This document shows positions 3,154 through 50,739 of a stretch of DNA of 64,000 nt, piece after piece. Both the position numbers and the translations under genes were made by a program. Source of the stretch: Euprymna scolopes (lineage: Eukaryota). Positions within the stretch are counted from its first letter, which is position 1. The number at the start of each line of letters is the position of its first letter. The notes beneath the pieces are model-generated. The model saw only the letters and a list, made by a program, of their open reading frames with translations. It had not been told where the DNA came from and searched no databases. Where the stretch lies: assembly GCA_053919585.1 (NCBI GenBank), contig CM132827.1; one strand, written 5' to 3'.

Positions 3154-3330
3154 GTTCCTGTTTGCAATGCCTCCCTCACGGGACAGAGTTAGACACCAGG
3201 GTTGTTTTTTAACGTGGAGAAAAGGAACAAAAATAAAAATTGTCTCAGTCGTGAAGGATTTCTCCTCCACTGACAGAGAACAAGAAATTGAAGTGCAGCA
3301 TCTGAAGAACAGATACTACACTTTGATCTT
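3154..3330 (-). mobile_element. U2 snRNA-headed SINE-like element, subfamily A (5'-truncated)
   Basis: Minus strand AAGATCAAAGTGTAGTATCTGTTCTT matches the U2 snRNA 5' region. Body near-identical to the copies at 25867-26036 and 27929-28113. Confidence 0.75.
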
Positions 3331-3763
3331 CATATTTAATTTATTCCGTTTAAAGAAAAAATTACAATTAAAAAAATTTCAATACAAAATTTAAAAAATT
3401 TAAAAAAGTAAAATCTCCAAAAGAAAAAACAAATTTAGGCACAAGGCCCTATAAGATCTGGGGAGGGGAGTGTTGCAGGGTCTTTGTAACTAATGTAAAA
3501 ATTGGAGCCTTTGGCGACTTTACTCTTGACTGGCAACATTTACCACAATACCTCATTCACTCTGTGGACTCTAAACTAACTAATGAAAACCCCAGCGTTT
3601 TTCGAAGGCCAAGCCAATCATGGAAACATAATTAAGAGAATGCTAAATAAATGTTCGTAAAAAAGGAGGGTTCAAAGACTCTGAGAAAGTAAAGTGTTAA
3701 TGGAAATTAATTACACATGGCATTTTTTCGGCTACCGCCAGATTCTCTATATGTTAGTACAAA

Positions 3764-4501: not shown

Positions 4502-4653
4502 NNNNNNNNNNNNNNNNNNNNNNNNNNNNNNNNNNNNNNNNNNNNNNNNNNNNNNNNNNNNNNNNNNNNNNNNNNNNNNNNNNNNNNNNNNNNNNNNNNN
4601 NNNNNNNNNNNNNNNNNNNNNNNNNNNNNNNNNNNNNNNNNNNNNNNNNNNNN
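4502..4653. other. Assembly gap (N run)
   Basis: Run of N. Confidence 1.
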
Positions 4654-11295: not shown

Positions 11296-13176
11296 TTAGC
11301 ATTGTAAAGCATCTTTCACATGTTTTTCCAGGTGTCTGCTCAAATGCGGACTTCGTGTAAAAGGGACCGCGCATAGTTCACATGTAAACAATTTCTCTCC
11401 GTTATGTGATTGTATGTGTTTTTTTAAATGTGATTGCTGCGAAAAGGAATTTTTGCAGATCTCACACGTAAACGGTTTAACGCCAGTGTGAATCTGCATG
11501 TGTCGATTTAGGTTAAAGCCCCTTGAGAATGTTTGTCCACACTCCGTGCAGGCATGGGCCTTTTGTCCTGTGTGGGCTTGCATATGTTCATTCAAAGACG
11601 TCTTCCGTGAGAATGCTGCGCCACAAAAGTGACATGCATAGGATTTCTCTCCCGTGTGAATGCGCATGTGACGTTTCAAGTGCGAGCTGCACGTGAACGC
11701 AGCATTGCACACGTCACAATCGTATGGCTTCTCTCCACTGTGAATCCGCTTGTGTATCTTTAAGTTCGACTGCACCGTAAACGACGACGCACAAATGTCA
11801 CATGAATATGGTTTCTCTCCTGTGTGTGTTCGAATATGCTTTTTTAGGGAGGACGATGTTGAAAATGTGGACCCACAAACTTCGCACGGATGTTTTTTAT
11901 GAGCCGCAGCTTGCATATGTTGGTCTAAACTTGATATAGCTGTCTTGACAGATTCACATTCATCGTCAACCAAAGGTTTTACAGGTGTTTGCATATGTTG
12001 GTTTAATGCAGATATAGCCGTTTCTATGGATTCACAAGTCTCATCAGGCAACGATGTTTCAGTCGCTTGCATCTGCTGGTTTGAAGTAGATATAACTGTT
12101 TCAACAGATTCATAATTTTTATCAACAAATGATGCTTCAAGCGCTTGCATATGCTGGTTTAAAGTAGATAAGGTTGTTTTGACAGATTCAGAATTCTTGT
12201 CACCCGAAGATGCTTCAACTGCTTGCATATGCTGGTCTGAAGTAGACAAAGATCTTCCGACAGATTCACAATTTTTATCAACCAAAGATTTTGCAGTTGA
12301 TTCACAATTCTCAATAACCAAAGATTTTTTAGATGTTTGCGTATGTTGGTTTGACATAGATACAGCTGTCTCGAGAGATTCACAATTCTTGTTGACCAAA
12401 GACTTTTTAGCCACGTGCATATGTTGGTTCAATGTAGATATAGCAGTTTCAACAGATTCACAATTCTCGTCAACAGAAGATTTTTCGGGTGCTTGTTTAC
12501 CTATTGACGGTGTTAATTTTGATGCGTGCAAAATGGGAGGTCCGAGAAATTTTCGAGTATAAGGTTTTTCACCAGTGTGCGCAAGCTTATGACGCTTTAA
12601 GCTTGAACTCTGCGCAAATGCACACGCGCATTCATTGCAAACGTATGGCTTTTCGCCCGTGTGTGTTCTACTGTGTTCCTTTAAAAGCGAGCTGCTTGGA
12701 AATGCCGAGCTACAGAGATCGCAAGAATAGGGTCTCTCTCCCGTATGTCTTCGGCGATGGATTTTTAATGTCGAAATCTGCGAAAAAGCCGATTTGCAAA
12801 TTTCACAAATGTAAGGCCTCTCGCCCGTGTGTGTGCGAATGTGCGTCTGCAAGCCGCTTTTCCGAAGAAAGGCCACGCCACAAACCTCACAGGAAAACCG
12901 TTTCACGCCGCCGTGCACGCACATGTGGCGTTTCAAGTTCATCTTCAAAGCAAAGCGAGCGCCACAAATCGTGCATGTGTGCGGTTTTTCTCCGCTGTGT
13001 ACACTCATGTGTCGTTTAAGGTTCATCTTGAGGGAAAAACTGCTTTCGCAAATCTCGCATGGATATGGTTTCACAAGCAAGTGCGTTTGCAAATGTCTTT
13101 TCAGGTTCTTTTCGGTCGCAAATGAAGATGGACAAGATTTGCATGAATATTGTTTGACATTCATTCCTTGACTCAT
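11296..13176 (-). CDS. C2H2 (Kruppel-type) zinc-finger protein, ~626 aa, 14 fingers in two clusters of 7
   Basis: Uninterrupted ORF with CxxC..HxxxH fingers and TGEKPY/TGERPY linkers. First ATG at 13176 (MSQGMNVKQY; the ORF-track start at 13242 is TTG). AATAAA on minus at ~11170-11175. Confidence 0.95.
   Translation of the reverse strand: MSQGMNVKQYSCKSCPSSFATEKNLKRHLQTHLLVKPYPCEICESSFSLKMNLKRHMSVHSGEKPHTCTICGARFALKMNLKRHMCVHGGVKRFSCEVCGVAFLRKSGLQTHIRTHTGERPYICEICKSAFSQISTLKIHRRRHTGERPYSCDLCSSAFPSSSLLKEHSRTHTGEKPYVCNECACAFAQSSSLKRHKLAHTGEKPYTRKFLGPPILHASKLTPSIGKQAPEKSSVDENCESVETAISTLNQHMHVAKKSLVNKNCESLETAVSMSNQHTQTSKKSLVIENCESTAKSLVDKNCESVGRSLSTSDQHMQAVEASSGDKNSESVKTTLSTLNQHMQALEASFVDKNYESVETVISTSNQQMQATETSLPDETCESIETAISALNQHMQTPVKPLVDDECESVKTAISSLDQHMQAAAHKKHPCEVCGSTFSTSSSLKKHIRTHTGEKPYSCDICASSFTVQSNLKIHKRIHSGEKPYDCDVCNAAFTCSSHLKRHMRIHTGEKSYACHFCGAAFSRKTSLNEHMQAHTGQKAHACTECGQTFSRGFNLNRHMQIHTGVKPFTCEICKNSFSQQSHLKKHIQSHNGEKLFTCELCAVPFTRSPHLSRHLEKHVKDALQC
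11900..12480 (-). repeat. Coding tandem repeat, 78 bp / 26 aa, ~7.5 units, between the two finger clusters
   Basis: Consensus SLVDxNCESVETAISTLNQHMQA repeated in the ORF translation. Confidence 0.9.
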
Positions 13177-14000
13177 GATTTTTTTTATTAATCGTTTTGC
13201 AAGAATCAGCACTTGAGCAGATTGATATCTACTGATTTCCAAGCAACTTGACCAAGTCGATATTCTGGACTTTTTTCAAGTGTGTTTACAAATGTCATTT
13301 CAAGTTCTTTTTGATCTTAAATGAACATGGGTAAGTTCTGTATGAATACTGTTCACCATTTGTTTTTAAATAATCATTTTTATTAGGCTTTAGTTAATGG
13401 TTTACAGGCAATTGATTATCTAAGTTAAAATTGTGGTCTTTCTTCCCCAATCAATTGTGTTTGCAAATGTATTTCAAATTCTTTTTGGTTGCAAATCATA
13501 GCATTGTTTGGCATCTCTTCATTTACTCATAGTAAGCCATCAAAAAACTGTTTTGCAATAATCAGCACTTTAACAAACTGATAGTTACTGATTTCCAAGC
13601 AATTTGAATAAATTGATATAGTGGGCTTTTTTCACAATCAAGTACATTTGCAAAAACAAAGGGAAAGATTTACAATGAATATTGTTTGACATCTGTTTCT
13701 TTGATTCATCGTTTTATTTGGCTTTATCAAAAACACACAAAAAATGTTTTCTTTACAATAATATCAGCTATTGGTTTCCAAACGACTTAATTAAGATAAA
13801 AAAAAAATAGACTGCACAATCAACATCCAAATGGTTTCACAATCAAGTGTATTTGCAAATGAACACAGGCAAGTTTATATGAATACTGTTTGGCATCCAT
13901 TTCTTGACTCACTATTTTGATTACACAAAAATGTATGGCTTGCAGTAATCATCTCTTGAACAAATTGATATTTTTACTGGTTTCCAAACAACTTGACTAT
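13177..14000 (-). repeat. Degenerate ~170-200 bp tandem copies of the ZNF start region (probable 5'UTR)
   Basis: Recurring GAATATTGTTTGACAT..CTTGA(C/T)TCAT (~13145, 13343, 13500, 13677, 13881) and CTG(A/G)TTTCCAA.CAA.TT motifs. Confidence 0.65.
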
Positions 14001-21518: not shown

Positions 21519-21626
21519 TTAAAACTACAAAAATTAGAGACAGATTGCAGGCTGCCAGAAAATATTGGAATCTTGACTCAAGAAAATAGTCTACTGCTGC
21601 TGATTTATTTCTATTGGTCAAGTTAT

Positions 21627-21850
21627 GGTCCTATTTATTTGGCTCCCCATGAGGGCGGAGATAGACACAAGGTCGGTTTTTAATGTGGGGAAAATCCAGC
21701 TACCCAAGAAAGGGCACTCTGGATGAGAACAAAAATAAAAATTGTCACAATCTAGAAGGATTTCTCCTCCATTCATCGAGGTCAGAAAAGATCAAGTGTA
21801 GTATCAGAACATATACTACACTTTGCTCCTGGCCAAAAGTCCAAAGAAAT
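21627..21850 (-). mobile_element. U2-headed SINE-like element, divergent variant
   Basis: Minus strand ATTTCTTTGGACTTTTGGCCAGGAGCAAAGTGTAGTATATGTTC, then an antisense copy of the U2 segment; shared tail CACATTAAAAACCGACCTTGTGTCTA..GGGGAGCCAAATAAATAGGACC. Confidence 0.65.
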
Positions 21851-24800
21851 TTTGTTTTTGCCAAGTTATGTTGTACCATACTTTACACTGTTCATAATAT
21901 TGAAAGCAATGTGAAAACTATTGAATTATGCTTCATGGATACATTCAGAAAGTCTAGCAAATAAAATAGGCATAAAAAATATGTGTGTACAAAAATGGCC
22001 ACCCATGATAACATATAGAACTACATGTGGAAAACTACTTGTTTTTCATCTAATTTTAAATTTTCGCCAATACTACACTGTGACAAGGCAGTTTGGTACG
22101 CGAGTGCACATTTAACAGTCCGTTTATGCTTGTGCATGGTGTAAATGAAGGCTAGGCTGTGAAATGGAAAATAGTCTCAGAGTTCAGGGGTTAATACCAT
22201 GCAAATGGTAAAATTGCGATGGAAACGGTTACCATATTCTTTTAAAATTTTAAATCTACAAAAAAAACATTTTTTTCTATACGAAGGTGAGACGGGCCTT
22301 AAAGTAAAATAATACTGATTTTACTTTTCTTTTAATTTCCTCATGTCTTTATTGAAAGATGAAAACAGAAAAAGAAATCGAAAAAAAAAACTTTTAGCCA
22401 ATAAACACGCAAATAAATGCCCCCCTCTCTCTGGTGACCAGAAAGTGGGTGCTCATCTTAAGTTAAATTTACATGGAAAAGTGATCACCCACCTTTCGAA
22501 AAAGTAATTTCTTCATATCATGAAAACTATTTTTTTTGCGACAGAAACGGTTTGCCGATTCATTTTTAGCACACCAAAATCTAAAAAAAAAAATATTTTT
22601 TTCTATACGAACGCGAGACTGGCCTTAAAGTAAAATTTTAGCGATTAAATAAAGTGTTAGCGCCCTAAATTCTCATAGAAAAATATGAACGAATCTCTTA
22701 GTAAAATAGATTTACCTCCCTCAGAACAATGAGTTAAACTTCAAGATTGCCTCAGAGAAAGAAAGATAATCATGCACCTATGTTACCGTTACTTTATTAT
22801 TTAGAAAGCAATTCTTAAAATTGGGAGGGAAGGGGCGTTTTGTAACTATTCTGTACTTCCACCTAACAATTTAATAAAAAAAAAAAAGGGTTGGACGTAC
22901 ACGAGTGTTACCGCTCTAGCGAAATACGTATCGGCTCCGATGTTGTACGCAGTTCGACTTAGGGAGGGCCTAATTTTTCTTATTTATTATGGCTTTTTTT
23001 TTGGCTTGTTCGGATTGTTTTTGTTTTTTTGTTTTTTTATGGATATTTTTTTATTTTGGCTTGAACTTTGCAATTTATTATTATAATATGATTTTTTTTA
23101 AATACATATTGGGATCAGTAGGAAAACTGAAATGGTCTCATGTCGATGAGGCCCTGTATAGAGAGGCTTATAACATGAAAAGTGAAAAAATTAGATAATT
23201 TTGAAACATTTTTAGAGCATGTTCATGAAAAATATGGTAATTAAAAAAAATCCCAATAAGCTTTGGGGGAAAAAACAGATTTTGAACAATTGAAATTTTT
23301 ATTTTTTATTTAAAATAATTATTAACACAAAAACAGTAGTGTTCTCGTTGAGTAGTTTTTATTTTATTCAAGAAAATAAAAGATGCTCATGCACTTATTG
23401 AGCCGTGCTGAAATAATGACATTATTTAGAAAGCTATTCTTAACATGGGGACGGGAGGGTGTCGTGTACCTATTCTGTACTTTCACCTAACAATTTAATA
23501 AAAACAGGTAACGTAAAACTTTAATTAAACTTGAAAATACTATTTAAAAATAGTGCAGATAAATAAGTGCACTAATAGCAGTGTCAGAAACCGATTTTAA
23601 GAATGCGGGGGAAAAAATTGAATAATTCGACCTCCTATTTTTACAAGCTTACAACTACTTGAAAAATGTAATTCAAACCCTAATTTTTGTTTCAATTAAA
23701 GGAACAAAGACCAAGTTTAAAAAAATAACAGGTTTAATAGCAAATTATGCAATATTTGTTTTTTTTAAATCGGCTTTCTTTAAAAAAGAGTTGAAGAAAA
23801 CCAACAAAATTTTTTTTTCTTTCGAGTATGAAAAATCGATATAAATTCCAAAAAATCACTTAACTAAAAAAATATTATTAAATGGGTAGTTCCATTCTTC
23901 ATTGTTAAGAATTTATCCATATTTATATTTTAAATTCTATTTATTTTTTAAATAAAAGAATTTTTTAAATGACTATTTGAAAAACGCGCGATCATGGAAG
24001 CATTTTTCGAAAAACCGGAAGTAATCTTTCTCCTTGCTTTGAACTATGGATGAACAAAAGGACATAAAAGCCACACGTTTATGTTAGGCGTGTAGCCTTG
24101 TAGCTGGAGAAATGTGTTCCCATAGTTTAAAAATAGTCAAATTTTACTCATAAGATTATTCCTTAAAAAAAAAAAACACTCCAGGTATTTCTTTTTTTCT
24201 TTTCTCAAAGAAATACATAAATTTTTGATTTATTATATTTTCATTCTTTTTTGTTGAGTAAAAATTTTTTTTTTTTAAATCTCTAAAAAAAGAAAATATT
24301 GAATCAAATAGAAAAAATTGTTGTTATCGTCCATGACTTACTGGACAATATAAGCAGAACATAGGCTTCCAATTAAAAAAAAAAAAAATCAACGTGGTTT
24401 AAAAAAAGGGTTTTACACTTTGGACTTTACAGGTAAATTTAAAAAAAACACTTCCTTTTTGTTTGTTTTAATTTACAATTTATTGATCTTTTATCTTCAA
24501 TTTGTGATATATAAAACTTTAGTACATTAATTATTTAAATTTAAATAGACATTTCAAAATGGGAGCGGAAATTAAAAAAAACGTTTGTCTAAAATATTAT
24601 ATTCGATTTATTGGAAAGAGCATAAAATTTCACATTGACCCTGAAAATATTGTAAAAATTGAACCAATAGAAAAATTTTGATAGATTTTTAAAGTTTAAA
24701 AATTGAAAATATTTAACTCATAAAATTCAATTGATTTTATTACATAAAAAAAATGGCTGCATGAAGGCGCTGGCACTTTGTAAACACTGTTTTTTAAAAA

Positions 24801-25866
24801 ATAAAAAATAATATTTCTATTATTTTTTCATACAACTTTAATAGTTTATTTTGGAAATATATTCCACAAAGAAAATAAATAATCCACTTTTAAAAGAGAA
24901 ATTACGAGTTTTTTAATATTTTATTCGCAGTTTTGTGTTAGGGGTGTCAAAAATCCCCCCCCCCCAATTCTGATCCACTTAGTGCACAAACACCAAATAA
25001 CATTTCACTGTGTTTTGATCGACGACATTCCATGAGCGGTAGGTATACGCTAAAGCTTTTTGTTTATTTTTGGGTGCAAGTCTATAAATGGTCCACAAGT
25101 AATCTTTTTTACTATATAAATCTGAAAAAAAAATCTTTATAATGTACGTACTTGTTACTGCATGAAAATGTCATATTCCAAAAATCACGTAAATCGATCA
25201 AGTAGTTTTTTGTATTTAAGAAAATCAAATATTATCAGACGTTTTATCAAAGATTTGCTACACGCCATCTTGTTTGAGAGATAACGGAACTTATTTATTT
25301 AATCGGGGTTCATTATGGCCGACGAAAACAGTACGTCTCGCTTAGTCAAAAACGTTGATTTTCTTGAATAAAAAACTACGTGATCAATTTATGTGATGTT
25401 TGGAATATGACATCCTCATTCTATATTTACATCGTACAGACTTTCTGGTGCCGCTTTACGTACCAATTTATATAAGCACGTTCACGTATAACTGAAATAC
25501 GTCGTACATATTTTTAAAACACTTCTTTTTTTTTTTTTTACTTTTATCTCAAAGTTAAAAAAGAAGGGGGAGGGGCTGAACGAGCTTTCCCCCTCGGGCC
25601 TGAATGCGCTTCTTCTCTCCCTGTTGTAAAATTAATTCCTTTTTACATTTTCTTATGTTTTGTTTTCCTTTCTTTTTTTTTTTGGAGATTATCGTCAAAA
25701 ATAGACTTAATTTACATATTAGCAGGATTTAAAAAAAAAAATTATTTTAAGTTCATTTAATGACTTTTAACGTGGGGGATCACTTTTCAGGTATAACGTT
25801 TTATTAAATTGATACCCCAATTTATGGTCAATCAGCTCTCCTTATTAAGGTGTCAGTAATTCAAAT

Positions 25867-26535
25867 GTTCCTATTCACAATGTCTCCCCACGGGAGAGAG
25901 TTAGACACCAGGGTCGTTTTTTAACGTGGAGAAAAGGAACAAAAATAAAAATTGTCTCAATCGTGAAGGATTTCTCCTCCACTTACAGAGAACAAGAAAT
26001 TGAAATGCAGCATCTGAAGAACAGATACTACACTTTTTATTTATTTGCTTCCCCACTGAGCAAATTAGGCAGGAGGCCGTTTTTTAATGTGGAGATAGGG
26101 GGAAAGGGGAGGGAAAGGGGGATCCAGCTCCCGAGAGGAGGGAAGTGGGAGCCAGATTAGAAACTGTTGGTATGAAGGGTTGCCCCTTCAGTGACCAAGG
26201 TCAGATATGTGGGGTTACCCCCACATATGGTCTTTGCTAGTCATTGCTAGTCTTTGCTAGTCATAGCTTTGCAGCATCTGCCGGAACAGATGGTATTTAT
26301 TTGCTCCCCCACCGAGCAAATTAGGCACAAGGCCAATTTTTAATGTGAGGAGTGAAGGGAGGGGGAAGGGAAAAAGGGGACCAGCTCCCGAGAGGTGGGA
26401 AATGGGAGCTGGTTAAAGGTCAGGCATGTGGGGTTGCCCCCACATCTGGTCTTTGCTAGTCATAGCTAGTCATAGCTTGCAGTATCTGTCGGAACAGATA
26501 CTACACTTTGATCTTGTCCCGAAGGCCAAATATGT
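25867..26535 (-). mobile_element. Three stacked U2-headed SINE-like elements (A: 25867-26036; B: 26037-26294; B: 26295-26535)
   Basis: Outermost copy starts ACATATTTGGCCTTCGGGACAAGATCAAAGTGTAGTATCTGTTC. Each (AAAT)n tail abuts the truncated U2 head of the next copy. Confidence 0.75.
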
Positions 26536-26563
26536 TATGTTAATTCAAATGTTGGTACTTCTA

Positions 26564-27047: not shown

Positions 27048-27312
27048 CACAAGTGTTTTCGTAAAAAAATAAAAATAAATAAATAAAATAAAAAGTGCTT
27101 ACTGCGCTACTTTTAAAACTGTTTTTTTTTGGGGGGGGGGTTAAATTCAAACGTTAATGTTGAAAAGTGCCACAATAACGTTGTATATAAAATATATATA
27201 AATATAAAATATACAATATAAAAGTCATGATGTAAATAAAAAAAGAAAAAAAAAAGAAAAGAAAATTCCTGCTAAGATAAAAAAAGTTAAGTCTATTCCT
27301 ATTTACAATGTC

Positions 27313-27928
27313 TGTTTGTTTTACTCTGTACACATAGATTCGAAAAAGTTGTCACAAACAAATATAGAACAAATAAATGTTATCAAAGACAAGATAAGGT
27401 ATTTTCTATCCAACTGGATATATTTTTAGTGTTTTTATTTAATGTAACATGTTTATTCAGCTCGAAAAACATACAGTGTTTACCGATGTATTGGAAAATT
27501 TTAAATGGCGGCGGACTCTCTCTCTCTCGGAGTCGGTAAGTTTGGGAAAAGGAGTTATAAATTAAAAAAAAAAAAAAAAAAAAAGAAACAGTCAAAATAC
27601 TATTAAAAACCCGCCGAATAAATGTCAGCCTATGTCATGATAACATAACAAGAGTGAGTTTCTAACAGTATTTTGTCTGGTGTTTTATTTATAACTCATT
27701 TTCCCAAACTTACCGCCTTAAAAAGAAAGTCGGCTGCCATTTACAATTTTCCAATGCATCGGTAAACACTGTATGTTTTTCGAGCTGAATAAACATGTTA
27801 CATTAAATATAAACACTAAAAACATATCCAGTTGGGTAAACTTATCTTGCCTTTGATAACATTTATTTGTTATATATTTGTTTTGTGACAACTTTTTCGA
27901 ATCTATGTGTACAGTAAAACAAACCCTA
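27313..27928. mobile_element. Palindromic MITE (right terminus AAACAAACCCTA) inserted in the tail of a U2-headed element
   Basis: Arms TGTACACATAGATTCGAAAAAGTTGTCAC / GTGACAACTTTTTCGAATCTATGTGTACA; ATGT(CT) on both flanks. Confidence 0.85.
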
Positions 27929-28113
27929 ATGTCTCCCCACGGGACAGAGTTAGATACCAGGGTCGTTTTTTAATGTGGAGAAAAGGAACAAAAATAAAAA
28001 GTGTCTCAGTCGTGAAGGATTTCTCCTCCATTGACAGAGAACAAGAAATTGAAGTGCAGCCAGCATCTGAAGAACAGATACTACACTTTGATCTTGACCC
28101 GAAGGCCAGATGT
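27929..28113 (-). mobile_element. U2-headed SINE-like element, subfamily A, near full length
   Basis: Minus strand ACATCTGGCCTTCGGGTCAAGATCAAAGTGTAGTATCTGTTCTT; internal Sm-site-like ATTTTTG; shared tail. Confidence 0.8.
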
Positions 28114-28427: not shown

Positions 28428-28540
28428 GTTTCTACTTGCATCCCTACAAGGGTAAAGTTAGACACAAGGTCTGTTTTTAACGTTAAGAAAGTCCAGTTCC
28501 CCAAAAAGGGGCATTAGGGATTGGTGCAGAAATAAAAATT
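28428..28540 (-). mobile_element. 3' fragment of the U2-headed SINE family
   Basis: GTTAGACACAAGGTCTGTTTTTAACG matches the family tail; cut by the adjacent MITE. Confidence 0.55.
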
Positions 28541-28970
28541 GGGGTTTGTATTACTATACACATAGATTCGAAAAAGTTGTCAAAAAACAGATATATAATA
28601 AATAAATGTTATCACAGGCAAGATAAGTTACTTTTCTACCCAACAACTGGATATTTTTTTTAGTGTTTTTATTTAATGTAACATGTTTATTCAGCTAAAA
28701 AAACATACAGTGTTTACCGATGTATTGGAAAATTTAAAATAGCGCACGACTCTCTCGTGGACACGGTAAGTTTGGGAAAATGAGTTAAAAATTAAAAAAA
28801 AACTGTACAAAATACTGTTAGAAACTCACTCAATATGTTACTGTGATATCATATACGCTGATTCGGTGGGTTTCTAACAGTATTTTGTATAGTTGCTTAT
28901 TTTTAACTTATTTCCCAAACTTACCGTGTTCAAGAGAGAGTCGGGCGCCATTTTAAATTTTCCAATACAT
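28541..28970. mobile_element. Partial second copy of the 27313-27928 MITE
   Basis: GGGTTTGTATTACTATACACATAGATTCGAAAAAGTTGTC arm plus a partial inverted arm. Confidence 0.75.
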
Positions 28971-30881: not shown

Positions 30882-32012
30882 TTAATCCTTGGATGGTATA
30901 GACCATGCTCCCAATCCTTTTTTTGATAATACCTTCAACCCACTGATTTCGTCCATTTTGAAAATTTTTGAAATATACATTTTCACCTGGGGAGAAGCAC
31001 TTGGTATTAAGGTTTTCTTTTTCTCTGGTAGCAGCCTATCGAAGACAGATCTTATCTTTCTTGCAAACATTAGCTCAGCCGGGGAAGAATTGACATTATT
31101 ATTAGGATTTGGTGTCACCCTGTAAATTGCTAAAAATGTTTGAATACATTGTTCGTCTGTGTCCGTAGTAAGATTTTTCTTAAGTGCCCTTTTAAACGTA
31201 TCTACAAATTTTTCGGCCAACCCATTCGATCGTGGATGGTACACAGGTGTTGTCATATGTAGAATATTTAGTGAGTCACAGAATTCTTTGAATTCATGAG
31301 CAGTAAATGCTGTTCCATTATCGCTCACTTTTGGCACTCCAAAACGGCTAAAAATTTCATTAAGCGCACTCACAGTGTTTTTTGCTGTTGGATGTCTAAA
31401 CTTAAATATTTCTGGCCATTTTGAAAAAGAATCTACAATAATCAAGTAAAAATAACCATTTATAGGTCCCGCATAATCAATATGCAGACGTGACCAGGGT
31501 AGGTCCGTCTTTGGCCATGGCGTCGTTTTTACTGGAGGATCTCGAGCTGCTAATTGACATCCTCTGCATGTCTTGACACATTTTTCAACTTCCTTGTCCA
31601 TACCAGGCCAGTACACATATCCTCTCATAAGGGATTTCATTCTCGAAATGCCCGGATGACCTGTATGAAATTCCTTCAGAATTTTCCTCTGTAACGTTAG
31701 TGGAATTACGATCCTCTCACCATACATGAGCACATCTTCACAGATGGAAAAAGGCGTTGTTTGATCTACCTTTTTATTTTTTTTTATCCATCCCAATTGA
31801 TTTTTCATTTTCTTAATGAAAATGTCATTTACTGCCTCTTTTTTTATTTTTTCGAAAGTTACCGGAAGTTCACGTATCATATTACACATTGAACTTGTAC
31901 ATTCACTTTCGTCTTTAAGCGCAGCAATTACCGTTTCTTCGAAACTTTCGCTTCTTTTAGGGATCAACCGTGATAATGCATCTGCGTGTCCTAACTTTTT
32001 TTGAGGATACAT
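30882..32012 (-). pseudogene. pol: Gypsy integrase region (HHCC + DDE)
   Basis: HTGHPGISRM..CRGC, LHIDYAGP, SDNG, SNGLAEKFV. Frameshifted from RNase H at an A-run near 32000. Confidence 0.9.
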
Positions 32013-33117
32013 GTTCCATCTTAAACTGATAGTTTAAGAGGGTTACAGCCCATCGCTGTAATCGATTCGCAGTATGTGTGGGAATGCCTTTCTTTGATCC
32101 AAATATGGTAAGTAGGGGTTTATGGTCGGTTTGCAAAATAAAAGATCGTCCATGGAGAAATCGATTGTACTTTGTAATTCCAAATATTATCGACAACGCC
32201 TCTTTTTCAATTTGGCTGTAATTTTTCTCCGCTGCCACCAACGTTCTTGAAGCATGGGCGATAGCTTTTGTCCTACCATCCTCATACTTGTGAAGTAATA
32301 CAGCGCCAACACCGTAATCACTGGCGTCCGTTGCTAGTATTAGTTCCTTTTCTGGATTGAAATGTGCCAATGCTAAGTCTGACAGTAGACATCTTTTGAT
32401 ATTTTGGAAAGCAGATTCACATTCCTTATTCCAGTTCCATTTAACACCCTTTTTCAGTAACTCGTTAAGAGGAGCTCTTAAATTATGTATGTTAGGGATG
32501 TAAATTGCATAGTATTGAACTAATCCCAAAAACGATTTTAATTTTGTCACTGAATCTGGAGCAGGCATCTTTTCAATTGCTTCAGTCCTTTGTGGATCCG
32601 GTCTTCGACCCTCTTTGTCGATTATTTGACCTAGATATTTAATTTTTTTCATAAAAAAATCGCATTTTTCTGGGCTCAATTTAAAACCAAATTCCTGTAT
32701 TCTTTTGAATACTTCTTTTACATGCTTCTTATGATCTTGCAAATTTTCACTTTTAATTAGGATATCGTCAAGGTAGGCCATTGAAAATTCCAACCCTGCC
32801 AGCATCGTGTCCATAATTTGCTGGAAAATAGCAGGAGCAACCTTTAATCCAAAAGGAAGCCTCTTTAGCTTAAAAATGCCCTTATGAGTATTTATGCCTA
32901 AGTATTTGGAGCATTCATCGCTGATCTTAATTTGCAAGTAAGCATCTGAGAGGTCTATCTTAGAAAAAATTTTTCCTCCGTTAAGCTTAGAGAACAGATC
33001 TTCTGCGGACGGAAGGGGATAATTATGGTCCAATAGACAGTCATTTAAACCCGTTGAAAAATCTCCACAGACCCTTATTCTGTTATTTTTTTTCTTTACA
33101 TACACGGTTGGACTTGC
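31957..33117 (-). pseudogene. pol: Gypsy reverse transcriptase / RNase H region
   Basis: RVCGDF, KIDLSDAYLQI, LPFGL, YLDD, LATDAS, YSQIEKEAL, TDHKPL. Confidence 0.95.
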
Positions 33118-34803
33118 TCAATCTGTGTGGTTAACTTTTTCAATGACTTCCAGTTGTTGAAGTCTATCCAACTCTTTTTCGATTGCGTCCATCGCTGAAA
33201 AAGGCACATTCCTTTTAGGTTTGAATACTGGAGTGGCATTTTTCTTTAATTCAAATTTTGCCTCTGTCTTAATACAGAGTCCTAGTCCTTCGGCAAAAAC
33301 ATTGGGAAATTCAGTTTTCAAATCCTTCAGGAAGTCTTCCCTTTGGTTTGCTTTTTCTGCAGTTAAAACGTTACAAAACGAATTTATGGGTTTCTCCCAT
33401 AAATTAAACAGGACAATCCAATCTACCCCAAACAGGCATGTATTCTTTCCTGGTACGACGTACACTTTGGATTTATGAGTCTGGTTAGCGAATGTCACTT
33501 TGCATTTTAATTCTCCCTTGAACTCTAATCTTTTGCCGCACACACTTCTCGCCGTCTTTCTGGTTTTCGTTAATTCAGGTCGACCTATCCTTTTCCATAT
33601 ATCTTCATTTATAATACTAATATCTGCACCGCTATCCAGAAGCAATGTAACCAGATGTCCATTTATCCGAACATCAACATATTTCCGTCTTTCGCAGCTT
33701 TTTTCTTTATTCATGCGAAGCGTATTTACATTATCGGTCCCTTGTCTTTTCTTCTGGGCACAGTATGTTCCCTTGTGACCTCTGAGACCACATTCATAAC
33801 ATATTTTGTTCCTAAACCAGCAGGTCTTATTGTTGTGTCTTAAACTACCACAACATTTACACTTTAGCTTTGGGTCTTTGTATCCTTTAAGGATCCTGTG
33901 TTCTTGGAACCTGGACTTTCTTGTGGTCCCTTGCCTTTTTACTTGCTGCACCTTAAAAATATTTTTCTCTTCAATGCGAGTGTTGTCTTTCTTTATGTTA
34001 ATCAGACGTTGACACTCTTCAGTGACTTTTTGCAATGTTATGTTAGGATCCGCCTCCATAATTGTTAGGATCCGTGAACGTATATCTTTGTCCCTTGGTG
34101 CTGTGAGACCTTGTACAAAGATTAAACATTTAAATCGGTCTGCGGAAATTTCATTCAATTTAAATGATTCGCATAAACAGTTCACAGTGCAAGCATATTC
34201 TAGATAGTCTTCAGCTTCTGCCTTCTGAATGTTCAAACATTTGTATCTAGAGTGAAATAGGCTATCCCTTTTATCAAATATTTTCGACAAGGTACTAATT
34301 GTTTCCTCGAACGAAACCTCCTCCGGTTTTTTTGGTAGAATTAGATTTGCATACTTGGTGTTTTCATCAGTACCCAGTTTTTGTAGTAGCAGGGTAACTT
34401 TTTCCTCATCGGTCCAGTCTAAACATCTTTTCGTAAAAATTGTTTCGTATCTTCTGTAGTATGCAGGGAAAGTAACACCAGTATCCGGGGAGTAACGAAA
34501 TTCCGTTAGTGAATTTGAAATACCCTCGGCAGAAAAATTAGTCTTCTTCCCGGTCGACGTTAGAATTAGCTTTTCTAAATTCTTTTGCTGTGTCGACATT
34601 TGTCGTTGTAGTATGTTTGTTTGTTCTTGTTGTGCCTCTAAAGTTTTTTGTGTTCTTTCTTGTTGTTGTTGCAGCTGTTGCTGTAGCTGTTGTTGTTGAA
34701 TTTGTTGTTGTTGTTGTTGTTGCGCTAAAAATTGTTGAGTCATTTTTGTCTGTTCCTGGATGCTAAGGGCTAGAGCCTTAGTTAACTCTGCTAATTGTTC
34801 CAT
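33118..34803 (-). pseudogene. gag: Gypsy gag-protease (polyQ N-terminus, two zinc knuckles, LLDSGA)
   Basis: CKCCGSLRHNNKTC and CYECGLRGHKGTYC. Ends at an in-frame TGA replacing the conserved W of DWASP. Confidence 0.92.
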
Positions 34804-35443
34804 GTTAGCTTCTAGTACAAAAATGTCTTTTCGAATTCTACACAATAATTCCAAAGAAAAATCGTAAATTTACGTATATCGTAAATTAGTAGCAATATGC
34901 AGACACAACACGTTTCAACAAAGTTCATCCATAGTAATTCAACAGGCTTTGTAAAATAATTCTTTTTTGTTTTTTTTTTTGTTTTTTTTTCAACAACGTA
35001 AGTTCATACACAAAATATTTCTTACTTCCCACGACAAATAGTTCCAATTATTTATATAAAGGCAATAACAAACAATTAATTTTCCAAAAAAAAAAAATAT
35101 ATGGCTGCCGTTCCCACGTGGCATAAAATGGTACAATAGTCGTTGTATTTATATTTTTTCTTTCGAAACTCGTAATCCTTTAGTGTAGTTTCGAATTCAA
35201 CTTGCGACCATTTTTTTTTTTTTTTACTTGTCAAAATAAATATAAATTCCACTTTACCTTGAACATGTTTCTATAATTTCTTGTGAGTTCTTTACGAAGA
35301 AAAATCCGTACTTTTCGCTACTTTAGGTAGGAAAAATTTTTAAATTCATTGACGCACGTGGTCAAAAATCCTTGTGTATTGTACACAGTCTTTGGTACGG
35401 TAATTTATCTCTGTTAAGAGAAAGAACATCCTTTCGTCGCCAT

Positions 35444-39123: not shown

Positions 39124-39345
39124 NNNNNNNNNNNNNNNNNNNNNNNNNNNNNNNNNNNNNNNNNNNNNNNNNNNNNNNNNNNNNNNNNNNNNNNNNNNNN
39201 NNNNNNNNNNNNNNNNNNNNNNNNNNNNNNNNNNNNNNNNNNNNNNNNNNNNNNNNNNNNNNNNNNNNNNNNNNNNNNNNNNNNNNNNNNNNNNNNNNNN
39301 NNNNNNNNNNNNNNNNNNNNNNNNNNNNNNNNNNNNNNNNNNNNN
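39124..39345. other. Assembly gap (N run)
   Basis: Run of N. Confidence 1.
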
Positions 39346-46295: not shown

Positions 46296-48236
46296 GGGAT
46301 TACGTCACATTATCATGGGGAGCTCTTCTTCTAGTTTGTGTGGGAAGAGAGTAGTTCTGGCCTCTCACCATTTGCCTCATTTTCTGGACATCTTGATACA
46401 ACATGTCCTTGTTGCTGGCAGAGATACAGTGTATCTTAGGGAATGCTCTTCTTGCTTTGTCCACGAGCTCCTGACAGTCTCTAGCAAAGTGATTGAGACC
46501 TCCACACTTGTGACATTGCACTGCATCCTGCTGGTTGATGATTGAAGGTGGGTCTATGATGAAGAATTCTGCGTCACTCGACCGCCACAGTAACAGGCTC
46601 ATCTACTTCTACCTCTTCTGTCATTAGAGCTCGAACACATTATTTATAGGATCATGTTTTTCATTCTTGAGAATCCATGCAACTATTGTCTAACAGAATC
46701 AGGGAGTCCGGACACCAAAGCGCAACTGAACCATCGGTCAGAGGGGTTTTCTTTAATTAGACATGCCAGGTCTTGTAGGTCACACAAGTATTCGTCCACA
46801 GTGCAAACAATAAGAGACAAACTTGTCAAATGCAGCAAAAGTGTCTGGTGCAAAGGTCAGAAATAGAGCTTGTTCCACCGGCTTTAAATCCTCCCTCTAG
46901 TCATGGGCTAAGCATCGGTATACTGTCAGAGCACCACCTCTCAACCTGAGGGGCAAAACATGCTCAACGTTGTCAACACCTCAGATTGTGTGACTGGGTG
47001 AGATGCCAGTATATTTGAGAATCAGCCTAATGTCTAATGCTTTGTCTGCAATTTGTGTTTGGTTATTTGCTGAACGAAATAGTGTGTTCTGTACAGTTTG
47101 GAGAATTATGGTTTAGAGCACTGGAACTCTTTACAAGGGCGACTTTTTTCTTTAATCAACGTTTTTTTTTCCATACGTATGGACGTCTTTTGCTGATGCA
47201 TGCACGTCTTTGGTGGATAAAAAACACCTTGTTTGTACATAAAAATCGGTTAATTAGCCCTTAAAAGCGACTTCTGTTTTATTGAGATTCTGCCTTCCCT
47301 CAACCAATTCTACGAGCGGCCGAGTCTACCAGCATCTTCACAAGAAGAAAACTACAGTCGCCTTTCAAGGCATGAACTACAACTACCATCGCCTTTCTAG
47401 GCAAGAACTACTCGCCATTTGGCAGAAGCTAAAGAGGGCACTCTTTTGCAATATGGACTCTTTTTTTACCCTTTTGTAAATAAAATTATTCTTGGATTTA
47501 AGGTGAGCCTTTGTTGCTTTTTCTGAGTCTCTTTCATTCTGCCATAGGCAAAAACGGGTAAGATAATTTCTTACACCGTTTTTATTGCAAACGAAATCCT
47601 TCCCCTCCCCCCCCTCAAATTTTCTTTTCTTATGAATAATAACGTTTTATTGCATAAGACCCCCCCCACATTATTTTGGATTTTTTTTCCTTTCATTGTG
47701 TCGCCTTTAAAAAAAATAATATATTTAATATTCATTTTTATATTAATTTGTAATGGTCCTTGAAAGACCATGTGCTTTGAAAAAAAAAAATAATATATTG
47801 AATATTCATTCTTATATTAAATTGTAATGGTCCATAAAGGAACATATTCATTGAAAATAAATATTCCTTCAATAAATTGTAACTGAAGTACATTGAAAAA
47901 AAATAAATATTATTTCATGTAAATTGTAAACTGAAGTTTTAATTCATAAAAAAAACAAACTACCTTTCAAATATTTTACGATAATTGTAATCGTTTAAAA
48001 AAAAATTATATATTGATTCTTGAATTTATAATTGATTCATTGTTGAAATGTGTTGTCGAATGTCAGTCTGAACTATTCTTATGGGTTTAAATTCCTTGTT
48101 CATTGAGAGTTTCGAATTTTGTTGACGTAACCCCCTTCAGATAGCGGTTCTCGTCGGAGAATCTTTTTCGCGCCCTTTGATTTATTTCCCCTCGTGGGAA
48201 CGGCCATTTTGTTTTCTCGTGTCGTGTCCTTCGAAC

Positions 48237-48995
48237 ATGGCAAATTCAAATCTTGTTGGTCGAATAGAAGCTAAAAAGTTTCGTATAACTGCTTCTTTGG
48301 ATTGGATGAAGGAGAGAGGAGGTGGGCGTTGTATAAATAATTTTTCTTCCGACATCGAGAAACGATTGTCTGAAATAGATGATTTATTAGATCAGTTAAT
48401 TTTAAAGTCCCCAGATGAGGAAAGACTAAATATATGTCGGGATTTCGAAATATTTAAAGCGGGAGTCCACGATAGATTGGCTGAGCTCCAGCCAGAGATT
48501 GAGAAATCAAGGGATATTGTTCCCATGAAAATGGAGTTGGAGTGCTCCCCCTTTCGTGGGGATCCAACTCCTAATAAGTTTGAGTTCCGTGGGTTCCTAA
48601 GGAAATTTGAATTCTGTACTGCGAACATGAAAAATGCAGATAAATTATTATTGCTAAAATCCAAATTATCAGGAGAGGCGTTTAATATTATTTCTAGGTT
48701 TGATGTGATTCCCGAGAATTACGAAGCTGCTTTGGAGTGTCTGAAGGAAAAATATTTAAATCCTTCAGCAATTATGAACAAAATATTCGATGACATTATT
48801 CCACAACCAGACCATTTTGCGTCTTTGAGGGATATCAGAATCTTCGTCCAGCGAGTCAAACTTGAACTGACGGAAATGGATAATTCCTTTGGCACGGATT
48901 TTCTTACAGATAAATCCACCTCAGGAAGATTAATAGCTCATATTCTGTTCGCTAAATTTCCGAACAGTGTTCGCAGAGAAATAATGAATAAATGA
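48237..48995 (+). pseudogene. gag: BEL/Pao gag (DUF1759-like)
   Basis: PF.G....F..F..KF, ADKLLLLKSKLSGEA, ENYEAALECLKEKY motifs; premature stop. Confidence 0.8.
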
Positions 48996-49147
48996 ATGCG
49001 TCAAGGTGGGAAAAATTCCCGCCAAACATGTCGGGTTCGTTGAATGCTGGAACCCTTGTGGCGAAGAATTCGGAGCCAAAACAAATCAAGTCCTTTCAGA
49101 GTAATAATAACTCTTAGTCTTTCGTCAAAAATGGCGAAAATAAATTT

Positions 49148-49395
49148 TGTAAATTGTGTCAGGTTGATGGTCACCTGACAAAAGTTTGTTCTAAATTTCC
49201 AAATTCGGAATCTAAAATTATTCGAGCGAAAGAATTAAGATTATGTCTCCGGTGCCTCGGTGAGCACTCAGAGTCCAGCTGCAGGGGGGTTAAGGGGTTC
49301 CCCTTCCCTTGCAGTAATTGTGGTCTAAAAAACCATTATTCCTTAATGTGTCCAAAAGAATCTAAGTCCTTTGTGGGACGTACTTTCGTGGCGGA
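49148..49395 (+). pseudogene. gag: BEL/Pao gag triple zinc knuckle
   Basis: CKLCQVDGHLTKVC, CLRCLGEHSESSC, CSNCGLKNHYSLMC. Confidence 0.8.
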
Positions 49396-49440
49396 TCAGG
49401 ACAAGAGTATTAGTCCTGTACTCACCAGAATTGTTGTCAT

Positions 49441-50739
49441 ATGGGAGCAAATTCAACCCTTAGCAAGGTGAGGCTATCGGGTTTTTGGATCCCCCAAGGG
49501 AGACAAGCGGTGAAGTCGGTTCTCCGTGACTGTGTTATATGTAAGAGAATTAATTCTCTACCGTACAAAGCACCCTCTGGGTCTCAACTGCCTTCTGATA
49601 GAGTAAATTTTGTCCGGCCCTTCAAATGTGTAGGGGTGGATTTTACTGGACATTTTTTTGTCAAAAACAATGATGAGGATGTCAAAATGTACATCCTACT
49701 GTTTACTTGCATGAGTTTACGTGCCATACACTTGGAATTGGTACCGGACATGAGCGCAAGATCCTTCTTGTTAGCGTTTGTTAGGTTCACCAACTTATTT
49801 GGTGTACCAACTCATATGTATTCCAACAATGCTAAATCTTTCATAGCGTCGGGTATTATATTATCAGACATATTTGTGTCTGATGAATTTAGAGAATATT
49901 TCAAATCCACTACTATTGTTCATTATACAATTCCCCTGTACTCTGCATGGCAAGGTGGAGTATGGGAGAGATTAATTAAAACTGTGAAACAGTGTCTTTC
50001 CAAGTTGTTGGGTAGGAGGAGGGTCGGTTATTTCGAGTTCCTAACCGCCGTTTCAGATGTTCAAAAGGCCATAAATGATAGGCCACTAACATTTATTTCA
50101 GCTTCTGATAGAGGCCTTGATGGGTTGACTCCCAACCATTTTTTGCAGACAGGATATCATCCCCGCTTGCTTATCAATCTTAGCGGTTCAGAGAACCCTT
50201 GTCCAGAACCTCCAAATAGAAATTCGCTCTTACATTCCCTTGAAATGAGGGATGAATTTGTCAGTAAATTTAAACATACTTGGCATAATGACTACTTGCT
50301 CTCAATTAGAGAAGTAGACGCCCACATTACAGAAAATGAAACCTCTAAAATATCAGAGGGTGAAATTGTTCTTATCAAAGCTCCTAATAAGTCCCGGCCC
50401 TTCTGGAGGTTTGGTAGGGTAGTAAAATTATTGTTCGGAAAGGACAACAAGGTTCGTTCGGCCTCAGTGCTGAAAGACGGGTGTGTCCAAATTCATTCCT
50501 TAAAAAATATTTATCCTTTAGAGATAAAACATAATCCTGAACCTGCATTAGCAGAATTTGCGGAAGAAGGAGGCCTCTTCTTTTGCCCCACGTGTTCAGT
50601 CGCCAACGACGGAACAACGCCTATGTTGTGTTGCGACTCGTGCAATGAGTGGTACCATTTTAGTTGTGTCGGGGTCGACCAACAAGTTACCGTTGAAGAT
50701 TGGGTGTGTCCGGATTGTGCGGACCAAACACCAAGTTAA
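49441..50739 (+). CDS. BEL/Pao integrase with C-terminal PHD finger (second catalytic Asp replaced by Asn)
   Basis: HQNCCHMG..FWIP..CVIC, VGVDFTG, LFTC..RAIHLELV, YSNNA, WQGGVWERL, INDRPL, LTPNHFL, DUF5641-like W..DYL/WRFGRV, then C4HC3 PHD. Confidence 0.88.
   Translation: MGANSTLSKVRLSGFWIPQGRQAVKSVLRDCVICKRINSLPYKAPSGSQLPSDRVNFVRPFKCVGVDFTGHFFVKNNDEDVKMYILLFTCMSLRAIHLELVPDMSARSFLLAFVRFTNLFGVPTHMYSNNAKSFIASGIILSDIFVSDEFREYFKSTTIVHYTIPLYSAWQGGVWERLIKTVKQCLSKLLGRRRVGYFEFLTAVSDVQKAINDRPLTFISASDRGLDGLTPNHFLQTGYHPRLLINLSGSENPCPEPPNRNSLLHSLEMRDEFVSKFKHTWHNDYLLSIREVDAHITENETSKISEGEIVLIKAPNKSRPFWRFGRVVKLLFGKDNKVRSASVLKDGCVQIHSLKNIYPLEIKHNPEPALAEFAEEGGLFFCPTCSVANDGTTPMLCCDSCNEWYHFSCVGVDQQVTVEDWVCPDCADQTPS

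What the first reader, a model, noticed from the sequence alone, without database searches (positions are those of the whole stretch)
27929..28113. Dispersed SINE-like family with a U2 snRNA-derived head
Seen: six minus-strand copies (3154-3330, 21627-21850, three in 25867-26535, 27929-28113) carry all or part of GGCCTTCGGG(T/A)CAAGATCAAAGTGTAGTATCTGTTC, and there is a tail-only piece at 28428-28540. They have at least two different bodies and one shared 3' tail (CAC(A/G)TTAAAAA..G(A/G)CC(T/C)..TG(T/C)CTAA..GTGGGGAG..AAAT). Known: this head matches the U2 snRNA 5' end (GGCCTT..GGCTAAGATCAAAGTGTAGTATCTGTTCTT), including the GUAGUA branch-point recognition sequence. U2 stem IIa is missing, so these are not ordinary U2 genes. 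snRNA-headed SINEs (SINEU) were described from crocodilians. Inference: an independent, probably high-copy U2-headed SINE family in an invertebrate, mobilised by a LINE that shares the tail. Subfamily A also keeps an Sm-site-like ATTTTTG.
Basis: partly seen in the sequence, partly recalled or inferred. Interest (0 to 1): 0.85.

Follow-up and report, generated by a model that had tools for sequence, protein, structure and literature searches.

The report
U2-headed short retroposon family
The flagged stretch is one copy of a family of short, non-coding jumping elements whose front end was copied from the spliceosomal U2 RNA, a rare element type published only from crocodilians, here in an invertebrate (probably a cephalopod mollusc) and already met many times in this scan.

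Summary
Observation confirmed. The window holds six head-bearing units and one 3' piece, all on the minus strand, and no others. The head matches U2 snRNA nt ~11-47; the head alone scores 29.2 bits (E 6.7e-5), and no copy reaches Rfam's gathering score. The bodies without the head give no U2 match.

The copies are retroposed. Two insertions have clear target-site duplications (13 bp around the whole three-unit chain, 9-11 bp around copy C) and two have weak 7-bp candidates. Some units are 5'-truncated. All share a stem-loop tail ending AAATAAATAGG, with no poly-A.

There are no A/B boxes and there are internal T-runs, so Pol III is unlikely.

New details:
- The arm after the head is an inverted copy of U2 itself.
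- The focal copy's last 16 nt lie 616 bp away, beyond an inserted inverted-repeat element.
- One of two chain junctions falls at the Keno/Utopia U2 site (nt 38|39).

Not testable here: the LINE partner, copy number, and the species' own U2 gene.

The scan found this family before on other DNA of this genome (more than 30 notes); those follow-ups report tens of thousands of copies and a U2-homing LINE. Papers searched describe SINEU only from crocodilians.

Verdict: a real new variant of a known kind, of moderate interest.

The parts
27928..28111 (-). Focal A-type unit, main part: ATCT, then the U2 head, inverted arm, body and tail stem-loop, up to ...GGGGAGACATT
28070..28107 (-). U2-derived head, GGCCTTCGGGTCAAGATCAAAGTGTAGTATCTGTTCTT. 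It matches the Rfam U2 consensus at 33 of 37 aligned positions with one inserted A. It includes the top of stem-loop I (here with a UUCG loop) and the GUAGUA branch-point box.
   Evidence: 29.2 bits, E 6.7e-5 for the head alone
28052..28069 (-). Fold-back arm. It is an inverted copy of U2 nt ~27-43, here carrying a 4-nt GCTG duplication, and it pairs with the branch-point box.
28013..28030 (-). GNRA-loop hairpin UGGAGGA-GAAA-UCCUUCA. It is shared by A, C and B2. B2 reads GAAGGG-GCAA-CCCUUC, with one compensatory pair change.
27989..27995 (-). Sm-site-like ATTTTTG, present in A and C only. Homology to the U2 Sm site is not demonstrable.
27928..27983 (-). Shared tail stem-loop: UUUCUCCAC, a 34-nt loop, then GUGGGGAGA. 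It is cut after ...ACATT by an inserted element.
27314..27927 (.). Interrupting element with ~210-bp terminal inverted repeats (87% alike). It is flanked by AGACATT on both sides and is not part of the family.
27298..27313 (-). Displaced last 16 nt of the focal unit, AGACATTGTAAATAGG. It matches the 3' end of unit A at 25870-25885 at 15 of 16 positions.
28429..28541 (-). C-type 3' part (74% identical to copy C). Its 5' edge abuts the terminus of a partial second copy of the inverted-repeat element.
25870..26540 (-). Three-unit head-to-tail chain: B1 26294-26540, B2 26038-26291, A 25870-26036. Only the first unit has a complete head. B2 starts at U2 nt ~38/39 and A at nt ~29.
26541..26553 (-). 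5' copy of the 13-bp target-site duplication AACATTTGAATTA that flanks the whole chain
25857..25869 (-). 3' copy of the same 13-bp target-site duplication
21628..21861 (-). C-type unit. Its head keeps the canonical UUUU loop of U2 stem-loop I, and its arm is an 18 of 18 inverted match to U2 AAGATCAAGTGTAGTATC. It is flanked by CATAACTTG (21862-21870 and 21619-21627).
3157..3330 (-). A-type unit, 5'-truncated at AAGATC (U2 nt ~24). A weak 7-bp duplication AA(A/C)TATG lies at 3331-3337 and 3150-3156.

Best explanation
These are copies of a family of short (about 170-250 nt), non-coding retroposons that depend on a LINE for movement. The first ~40-47 nt descend from the 5' end of U2 snRNA: the top of stem-loop I plus the branch-point box. 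An inverted copy of that U2 segment follows, then interchangeable hairpin modules (types A, B and C). All types end in one shared 3' stem-loop followed by AAATAAATAGG.

Shown:
- U2 ancestry of the head.
- Strong predicted RNA structure.
- Insertion with target-site duplications of 7-13 bp at targets that begin AA(C/T/A).
- 5'-truncated units.
- Mixed head-to-tail chains inside a single duplication.
- No A/B boxes, and internal T-runs.

Inferred: a transcript is made by Pol II or by read-through, not by Pol III. It folds, and its 3' stem-loop plus AAAT repeats is recognised by the reverse transcriptase of a 'stringent-type' LINE. That enzyme copies the transcript into a nicked target by target-primed reverse transcription. 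In this window I cannot tell whether the head was captured from U2 RNA or is the co-transcribed flank of a U2-homing LINE.
For: - Head: exact 24-mer in 3 copies, 0 expected by chance. Rfam U2 gives E 1.6e-4, 4.9e-3 and 0.086 for full units and 6.7e-5 for the head alone.
- Retroposition: a perfect 13-bp duplication around the 671-bp chain, 9 bp (11 bp with one mismatch) around C, and 7 bp with one mismatch around two A copies.
- 5' ends: U2 nt ~1, ~24, ~29 and ~38/39.
- Family structure: seven tails with nhmmer E <= 4e-15 and three body types joined to the same head and tail.
- Age: A copies are 93.7-95.6% alike, mostly differing by transitions.
- Structure: z-scores of -4.6, -5.0 and -2.1 against dinucleotide-preserving shuffles, and one compensatory change in the GNRA hairpin.
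- Polymerase: no box B, and runs of T4-T5 inside A, C and B1 (B2 has none).
- The chain is not a tandem duplication: B1 and B2 are 69% alike.
Against: - No LINE with this tail, and no LINE ORF at all, is in the window.
- Copy number and dispersal beyond 64 kb were not measured by me. Two metagenome scans and a protein search with a SINE-derived ORF found nothing.
- The species' real U2 gene is not in the window, so the head was compared only with the Rfam consensus.
- Two of the four target-site duplications are short and imperfect.
- There is no expression evidence.
Confidence: 0.8

Rival explanations
1. Self-homing derivative of a U2-targeting LINE (Keno or Utopia type). On this reading the U2 head is not a captured snRNA. 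It is the target-site flank co-transcribed with a LINE that inserts at U2 nt 38|39. The short elements keep that leader, and new copies land in the U2-like heads of older copies, which builds the chains. This refines the best explanation rather than excluding it.
For: - Utopia and Keno share one 3' junction, with U2 resuming at nt 39 (PMC4640811).
- Chain junction 1 reads ...AAATAAATA-CC-A|TCTGTTCC, so it resumes at nt 38/39.
- The head ends at nt ~47, as expected if a ~9-bp duplication of TCTGTTCTT accompanies insertion.
- The whole chain has one outer target-site duplication, as expected if later units entered an already inserted element.
- Crocodilian Tx1 LINEs share U1/U2 heads with SINEU (PMC4494074).
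- Earlier scan notes on other windows report such LINEs; I did not check them.
Against: - Chain junction 2 resumes at nt ~29, not 39.
- All four duplication-flanked insertions in the window sit at non-U2 sites that begin AA(C/T/A). Their similarity to the U2 site is not significant (empirical p 0.06, 0.09, 0.22, 0.90).
- Internal junctions lack the terminal GG seen at duplication-flanked 3' ends.
- The single outer duplication is equally explained by template switching between element RNAs within one insertion event, or by retroposition of an array transcript.
Confidence: 0.35
2. Independent chimeric retrocopies: U2 RNA joined to other RNAs by template switching, one event per copy, rather than a propagating family.
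For: Template switching onto snRNAs is documented for L1 (discussed in PMC4494074).
Against: - The head/arm/body junctions are the same in all three A copies, which are 94-96% alike.
- The same tail occurs in seven units.
- The three A copies have separate 5' ends, and their flanks (one of them the chain's) carry different duplications.
Confidence: 0.03
3. U2 snRNA genes, variant U2 genes or plain U2 pseudogenes.
For: A U2-like 5' end. Infernal can also force a global alignment that places hairpins and ATTTTTG opposite stem IIb, the Sm site and stem-loops III/IV.
Against: - All copies score below the gathering threshold.
- Stem IIa is replaced by an inverted U2 arm.
- The bodies alone give no U2 hit.
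- Three unrelated bodies occur, along with target-site duplications and truncated units.
Confidence: 0.02
4. A family of structured non-coding RNA genes, or a local satellite, rather than mobile DNA.
For: Strong predicted folds and GNRA/UUCG loops.
Against: The copies are dispersed at four loci over 25 kb, each with its own flanks and duplications. Units are 5'-truncated. The chain mixes units that are only 69% alike.
Confidence: 0.03

Closest known systems
SINEU (SINEU-1, -2, -3) of crocodilians, Kojima 2015 (PMC4494074)
   Same: Short non-coding retroposons with a U2 (or U1) snRNA-derived 5' region, no recognisable Pol III promoter, internal oligo-T runs, subfamilies with swapped parts, and variable 5' extensions.
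   Different: - All SINEU end in poly-A, whereas this family ends in a stem-loop plus AAATAAATAGG.
- This family carries an inverted U2 arm that folds back on the head.
- The host is an invertebrate.
- SINEU prefers a Mariner element as target and is tied to Tx1-Mar LINEs; neither could be tested here.
- The 2015 paper states that no SINEU was detected outside crocodilians.
U2-targeting LINEs Keno (Tx1 clade, AP-type endonuclease) and Utopia (NeSL clade, restriction-like endonuclease), PMC4640811
   Same: They use U2 nt 38|39 as their landing site. One chain junction here resumes exactly there, and Utopia-1_NVit also occurs in tandem within U2 genes.
   Different: Those are autonomous, protein-coding elements found inside real U2 genes. 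The units here are non-coding, and in this window they lie at non-U2 sites or inside each other.
Stringent-type SINE/LINE pairs whose tail is a stem-loop plus short repeats (for example UnaL2 and its SINEs); recalled from general knowledge, not tested
   Same: A 3' stem-loop followed by a short repeated motif in place of poly-A.
   Different: No sequence relation was tested and the partner LINE is unknown.
R2 elements that retain a stretch of 28S rRNA at the 5' end of the processed co-transcript (cited in PMC4494074's discussion; details recalled from general knowledge)
   Same: A leader made of target sequence that could help rejoin the 5' end to the target. This is the analogy behind the self-homing reading.
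   Different: R2 is autonomous and strictly site-specific. No ribozyme and no real-U2-gene insertion was seen here.

Membership tests
SINEU (snRNA-headed SINE) | Short (<500 bp) non-coding retroposon | tested here: met
   Units are 167-252 nt. No Pfam domain was found in overlapping ORFs. Target-site duplications are present.
SINEU (snRNA-headed SINE) | 5' region derived from U1 or U2 snRNA | tested here: met
   Rfam U2 scores 29.2 bits (E 6.7e-5) for the head alone, and 33 of 37 aligned positions are identical to the consensus.
SINEU (snRNA-headed SINE) | 3' poly-A tail (stated for all SINEU groups) | tested here: not met
   All seven tails end in a stem-loop plus AAATAAATA(GG) or CATTGTGAATAGG. 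No A-run is present.
SINEU (snRNA-headed SINE) | Partner Tx1-type LINE sharing the head and the target preference | not testable with these tools
   No LINE is present in the window. Public scans found nothing.
Classical SINE (Pol III, internal promoter) | Box A and box B in a tRNA-, 7SL- or 5S-derived head, with no internal terminator | tested here: not met
   No box B at up to 2 mismatches in any unit. Box A-like hits occur only in tails. T4-T5 runs lie inside A, C and B1.
U2 snRNA gene (Rfam RF00004) | Score at or above the gathering threshold, with stems IIa/IIb, the Sm site and stem-loops III/IV | tested here: not met
   There are 0 hits at gathering score. The best score is 36 against a threshold of 46 bits. 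The bodies alone give no U2 hit.
Non-autonomous derivative of a U2-homing LINE (Keno/Utopia type) | 3' junction at U2 nt 38|39 | tested here: inconclusive
   One of two chain junctions fits. None of the four duplication-flanked insertions lies in a U2-like site (p 0.06-0.90).
Non-autonomous derivative of a U2-homing LINE (Keno/Utopia type) | 5' and 3' ends shared with an autonomous LINE of the same genome | not testable with these tools
   Only this window is readable. Earlier scan notes claim such LINEs exist, but I did not check them.

The most novel reading that the evidence does not exclude
The U2 leader, together with its inverted copy, is a working homing device. Element RNAs carry the landing site of their own U2-homing LINE. 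Their cDNA re-anneals to the U2-like head of a resident copy, so new units enter seamlessly and build mixed head-to-tail arrays. In that case snRNA 'heads' in general, crocodilian SINEU included, would be target-site leaders of snRNA-homing LINEs rather than captured snRNAs. That would answer the open question of where such heads come from and how promoter-less SINEU are transcribed.
Probability: 0.3. Interest if true: 0.7.

Novelty: new variant of a known kind. Interest (0 to 1): 0.5.

Why it matters
SINEs headed by a Pol II snRNA are known from a single vertebrate order, and how they acquire their heads and get transcribed is an acknowledged open question (PMC4494074). A second, independent family has a different tail, an inverted U2 arm and stacked arrays. 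Its host is an invertebrate whose genome reportedly carries it in very large numbers. That gives a system in which the capture and target-leader models can be told apart by counting junctions genome-wide. It also matters for annotation: these units score as weak U2 hits and could be mis-called as U2 pseudogenes.

Tried and rejected
- **Rfam at gathering score:** no hit in the window.
- **Rfam on the bodies without the head:** no U2 match on the element strand, so 'the whole element is a remodelled U2' is not supported. The only extra hit is the inverted arm on the opposite strand.
- **LINE partner in the window:** Pfam scans of 28 ORFs found only Gypsy, BEL/Pao, zinc-finger and zinc-knuckle domains. 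nhmmer with the tail profile found no eighth tail.
- **More copies elsewhere:**
  - Two metagenome scans, one with the head/arm junction and one with the tail, found 0 matches.
  - A protein search with the ORF that runs antisense through the element found no candidate.
  - Three long ENA contigs carrying related Gypsy proteins gave no DNA.
  - A 21.8-kb Argonauta hians locus and a 5.5-kb ENA contig hold no copy.
- **Host identification:** the zinc-finger ORF was uninformative. The Gypsy gag-protease gave only an octopod as nearest named relative, at 47% identity.
- **U2-like target sites:** similarity of the insertion sites to the U2 site is not significant.

Full report
**Observation**

The 24-mer AAGATCAAAGTGTAGTATCTGTTC occurs exactly at 3307-3330, 26492-26515 and 28072-28095, and with three mismatches at 21807-21830. 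All four are on the minus strand, and none is expected by chance. All-against-all blastn and nhmmer profiles of the head and tail find exactly six heads and seven tails in 64 kb. Every one is on the minus strand, and nothing else resembles them.

The MAFFT alignment shows three body types:
- A: three copies, 93.7-95.6% alike, differing mostly by transitions.
- C: one copy plus a 3' piece. It is 75-79% like A over the front body.
- B: two units, only 69% alike.

The types are mosaics. A, C and B2 share a GNRA-loop hairpin. C and B share a further hairpin. All seven share a tail: UCUCCAC, AUUAAAAA..GRCC..UGYCUAA, GUGGGGAG, then AAATAAATA(GG).

**U2 ancestry**

Rfam finds no U2 gene at gathering score. 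With E-value reporting, three full units hit RF00004 at 36.0, 29.7 and 24.5 bits, against a gathering score of 46 (E 1.6e-4, 4.9e-3 and 0.086). The head alone scores 29.2 bits, E 6.7e-5. In the alignment, 33 of 37 head positions equal the U2 consensus from the top of stem-loop I through GUAGUAUCUGUUCUU, with one inserted A.

Copy C keeps the canonical UUUU loop of stem-loop I. A and B have UUCG instead.

The bodies without the head give no U2 match on the element strand at E <= 10. The body adds only about 7 bits to the forced global alignment. U2 descent is therefore shown for the head only. The 'retained Sm site' ATTTTTG cannot be told apart from chance in AT-rich sequence.

Inside the target-site duplications, 4-19 nt precede GGCC. 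They resemble U2 nt 1-10 only loosely; C is the best case, with TTCTTTGG.

**The inverted U2 arm**

The sequence after the head is not random filler. It is an inverted copy of U2 itself.
- In C, the reverse complement of the arm reads AAGATCAAGTGTAGTATC. That is 18 of 18 against the consensus and closer to it than C's own forward head.
- In A, the arm covers about nt 22-43. It has two A-to-G changes that keep G-U pairs.
- In B, the arm covers about nt 31-43.

The result is an 11-14 bp hairpin that buries the branch-point box.

Whole units fold far better than dinucleotide-preserving shuffles, with z-scores of -4.6 (A), -5.0 (B1) and -2.1 (C). The GNRA hairpin shows one compensatory pair change between A/C and B2. 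This is weak but positive evidence that structure matters in the source copies.

**Retroposition**

- The 671-bp chain (25870-26540) is flanked by a perfect 13-bp duplication, AACATTTGAATTA.
- Copy C is flanked by CATAACTTG, or 11 bp with one mismatch.
- The A copy at 3157-3330 has a weak 7-bp duplication, AA(A/C)TATG, read.
- The focal copy has a weak 7-bp duplication, AA(C/T)AGAC, read.

Each duplication-flanked 3' end reads A(T/C)AGG and is followed by a target that begins with AA or AC. Units start at U2 nt ~1, ~24, ~29 and ~38/39. These are the marks of LINE-mediated target-primed reverse transcription.

No unit has a box B. Box A-like matches lie only in tails. A, C and B1 contain T4-T5 runs. 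Pol III transcription is therefore unlikely, as Kojima argued for SINEU.

**The focal copy is split**

A 614-bp element with ~210-bp terminal inverted repeats (27314-27927) sits in the tail. It is flanked by AGACATT on both sides. The element's last 16 nt, AGACATTGTAAATAGG, lie at 27298-27313. A partial second copy of that inverted-repeat element abuts the 5' edge of the 'tail-only' piece. That piece may therefore be interrupted rather than truncated.

**The chain**

Only the first unit has a whole head. B2 resumes at A|TCTGTTCC, which is U2 nt 38/39. The A unit resumes at AAAGTG, about nt 29.

Because B1 and B2 are 69% alike, this is not a tandem duplication. A single outer target-site duplication fits three histories that I cannot separate with two junctions:
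1. Later units entered the head of a resident copy.
2. The reverse transcriptase switched between element RNAs within one insertion event.
3. An array transcript was retroposed as one piece.

Utopia and Keno LINEs insert so that U2 resumes at nt 39 (PMC4640811). Junction 1 fits that site and junction 2 does not. The four duplication-flanked insertions are at non-U2 sites. Two have a GTGTAG-like motif just upstream, but the similarity is not significant (p 0.06 and 0.09).

**What could not be tested**

- The window has no LINE ORF. It holds only Gypsy and BEL/Pao elements, a C2H2 zinc-finger ORF and a zinc knuckle.
- Attempts to fetch further copies or a partner from public collections failed.
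- The host is not identified. GC is about 33% in most of the window. The nearest named relative of the Gypsy gag-protease is from the octopod Argonauta hians at 47% identity. This is compatible with a cephalopod but proves nothing.

**Comparison with what is known**

The closest described kind is SINEU. The shared features are short length, no coding capacity, a U2-derived 5' end, no Pol III promoter, internal T-runs, and variable 5' extensions. The differences are the tail (all SINEU have poly-A), the inverted U2 arm, the host, and an untested partner.

In the papers I could search, SINEU is described only from crocodilians, and the 2015 paper states that none was found elsewhere. Repbase and Dfam could not be consulted.

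**Earlier findings of this scan**

The same family has been noted on other DNA of this genome more than 30 times. Follow-ups there report tens of thousands of copies, a 47-nt U2 leader, LINEs carrying the same leader, and stacking at one fixed point. I could not check those counts or the LINEs.

This window agrees on the head, the fold-back and the single duplication around an array. It agrees only half-way on the 'one fixed point', since one of two junctions fits.

**Verdict**

This is a real, fairly young U2-headed retroposon family and a new variant of a known kind. The finding repeats earlier ones from this scan, so its marginal value lies in three details: the inverted U2 arm, the non-U2 target sites with duplications, and the split focal copy.

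Noticed in passing
window 27314-27927 and 28538-28970: A ~614-bp element with ~210-bp terminal inverted repeats (87% alike) is inserted in the tail of the focal retroposon, with AGACATT on both sides. A partial second copy lies 600 bp away, and its terminus touches another retroposon piece. Two copies of one element both landing in these retroposons may point to a target preference or to a local rearrangement.
   Followed up: partly
window 30882-34854 (-): Gypsy-type LTR retroelement with ORFs for gag/protease (DUF7083, aspartyl protease), RT-RNase H and integrase. The nearest named relative of the gag-protease is from Argonauta hians, at 47% identity.
   Followed up: partly
window 48177-50739 (+): BEL/Pao-type ORFs (DUF1759, DUF5641, integrase zinc-binding domain). 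The last one ends in a PHD finger.
   Followed up: no
window 11296-13242 (-): A 648-aa open frame made almost entirely of C2H2 zinc fingers. Its homologues are generic across animals.
   Followed up: partly
window 3431-3448 (-): A 16-18-nt match to the B-type tail core, GGCCTTGTGCCTAAAT, about 100 nt upstream of the A copy at 3330 (nhmmer E 0.22). It is either a relic of an older unit or chance.
   Followed up: partly
window 3157-28541: All five independent insertion events of the family are on the minus strand (p about 1/16). No host gene was identified that would explain an orientation bias.
   Followed up: no
window 52001-64000: GC rises to about 46% with a steady AT skew of 0.13. This fits the long satellite that another first-reader note describes there.
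   Followed up: no
window 4502-4653 and 39124-39345: Two runs of N, left untouched.
   Followed up: no
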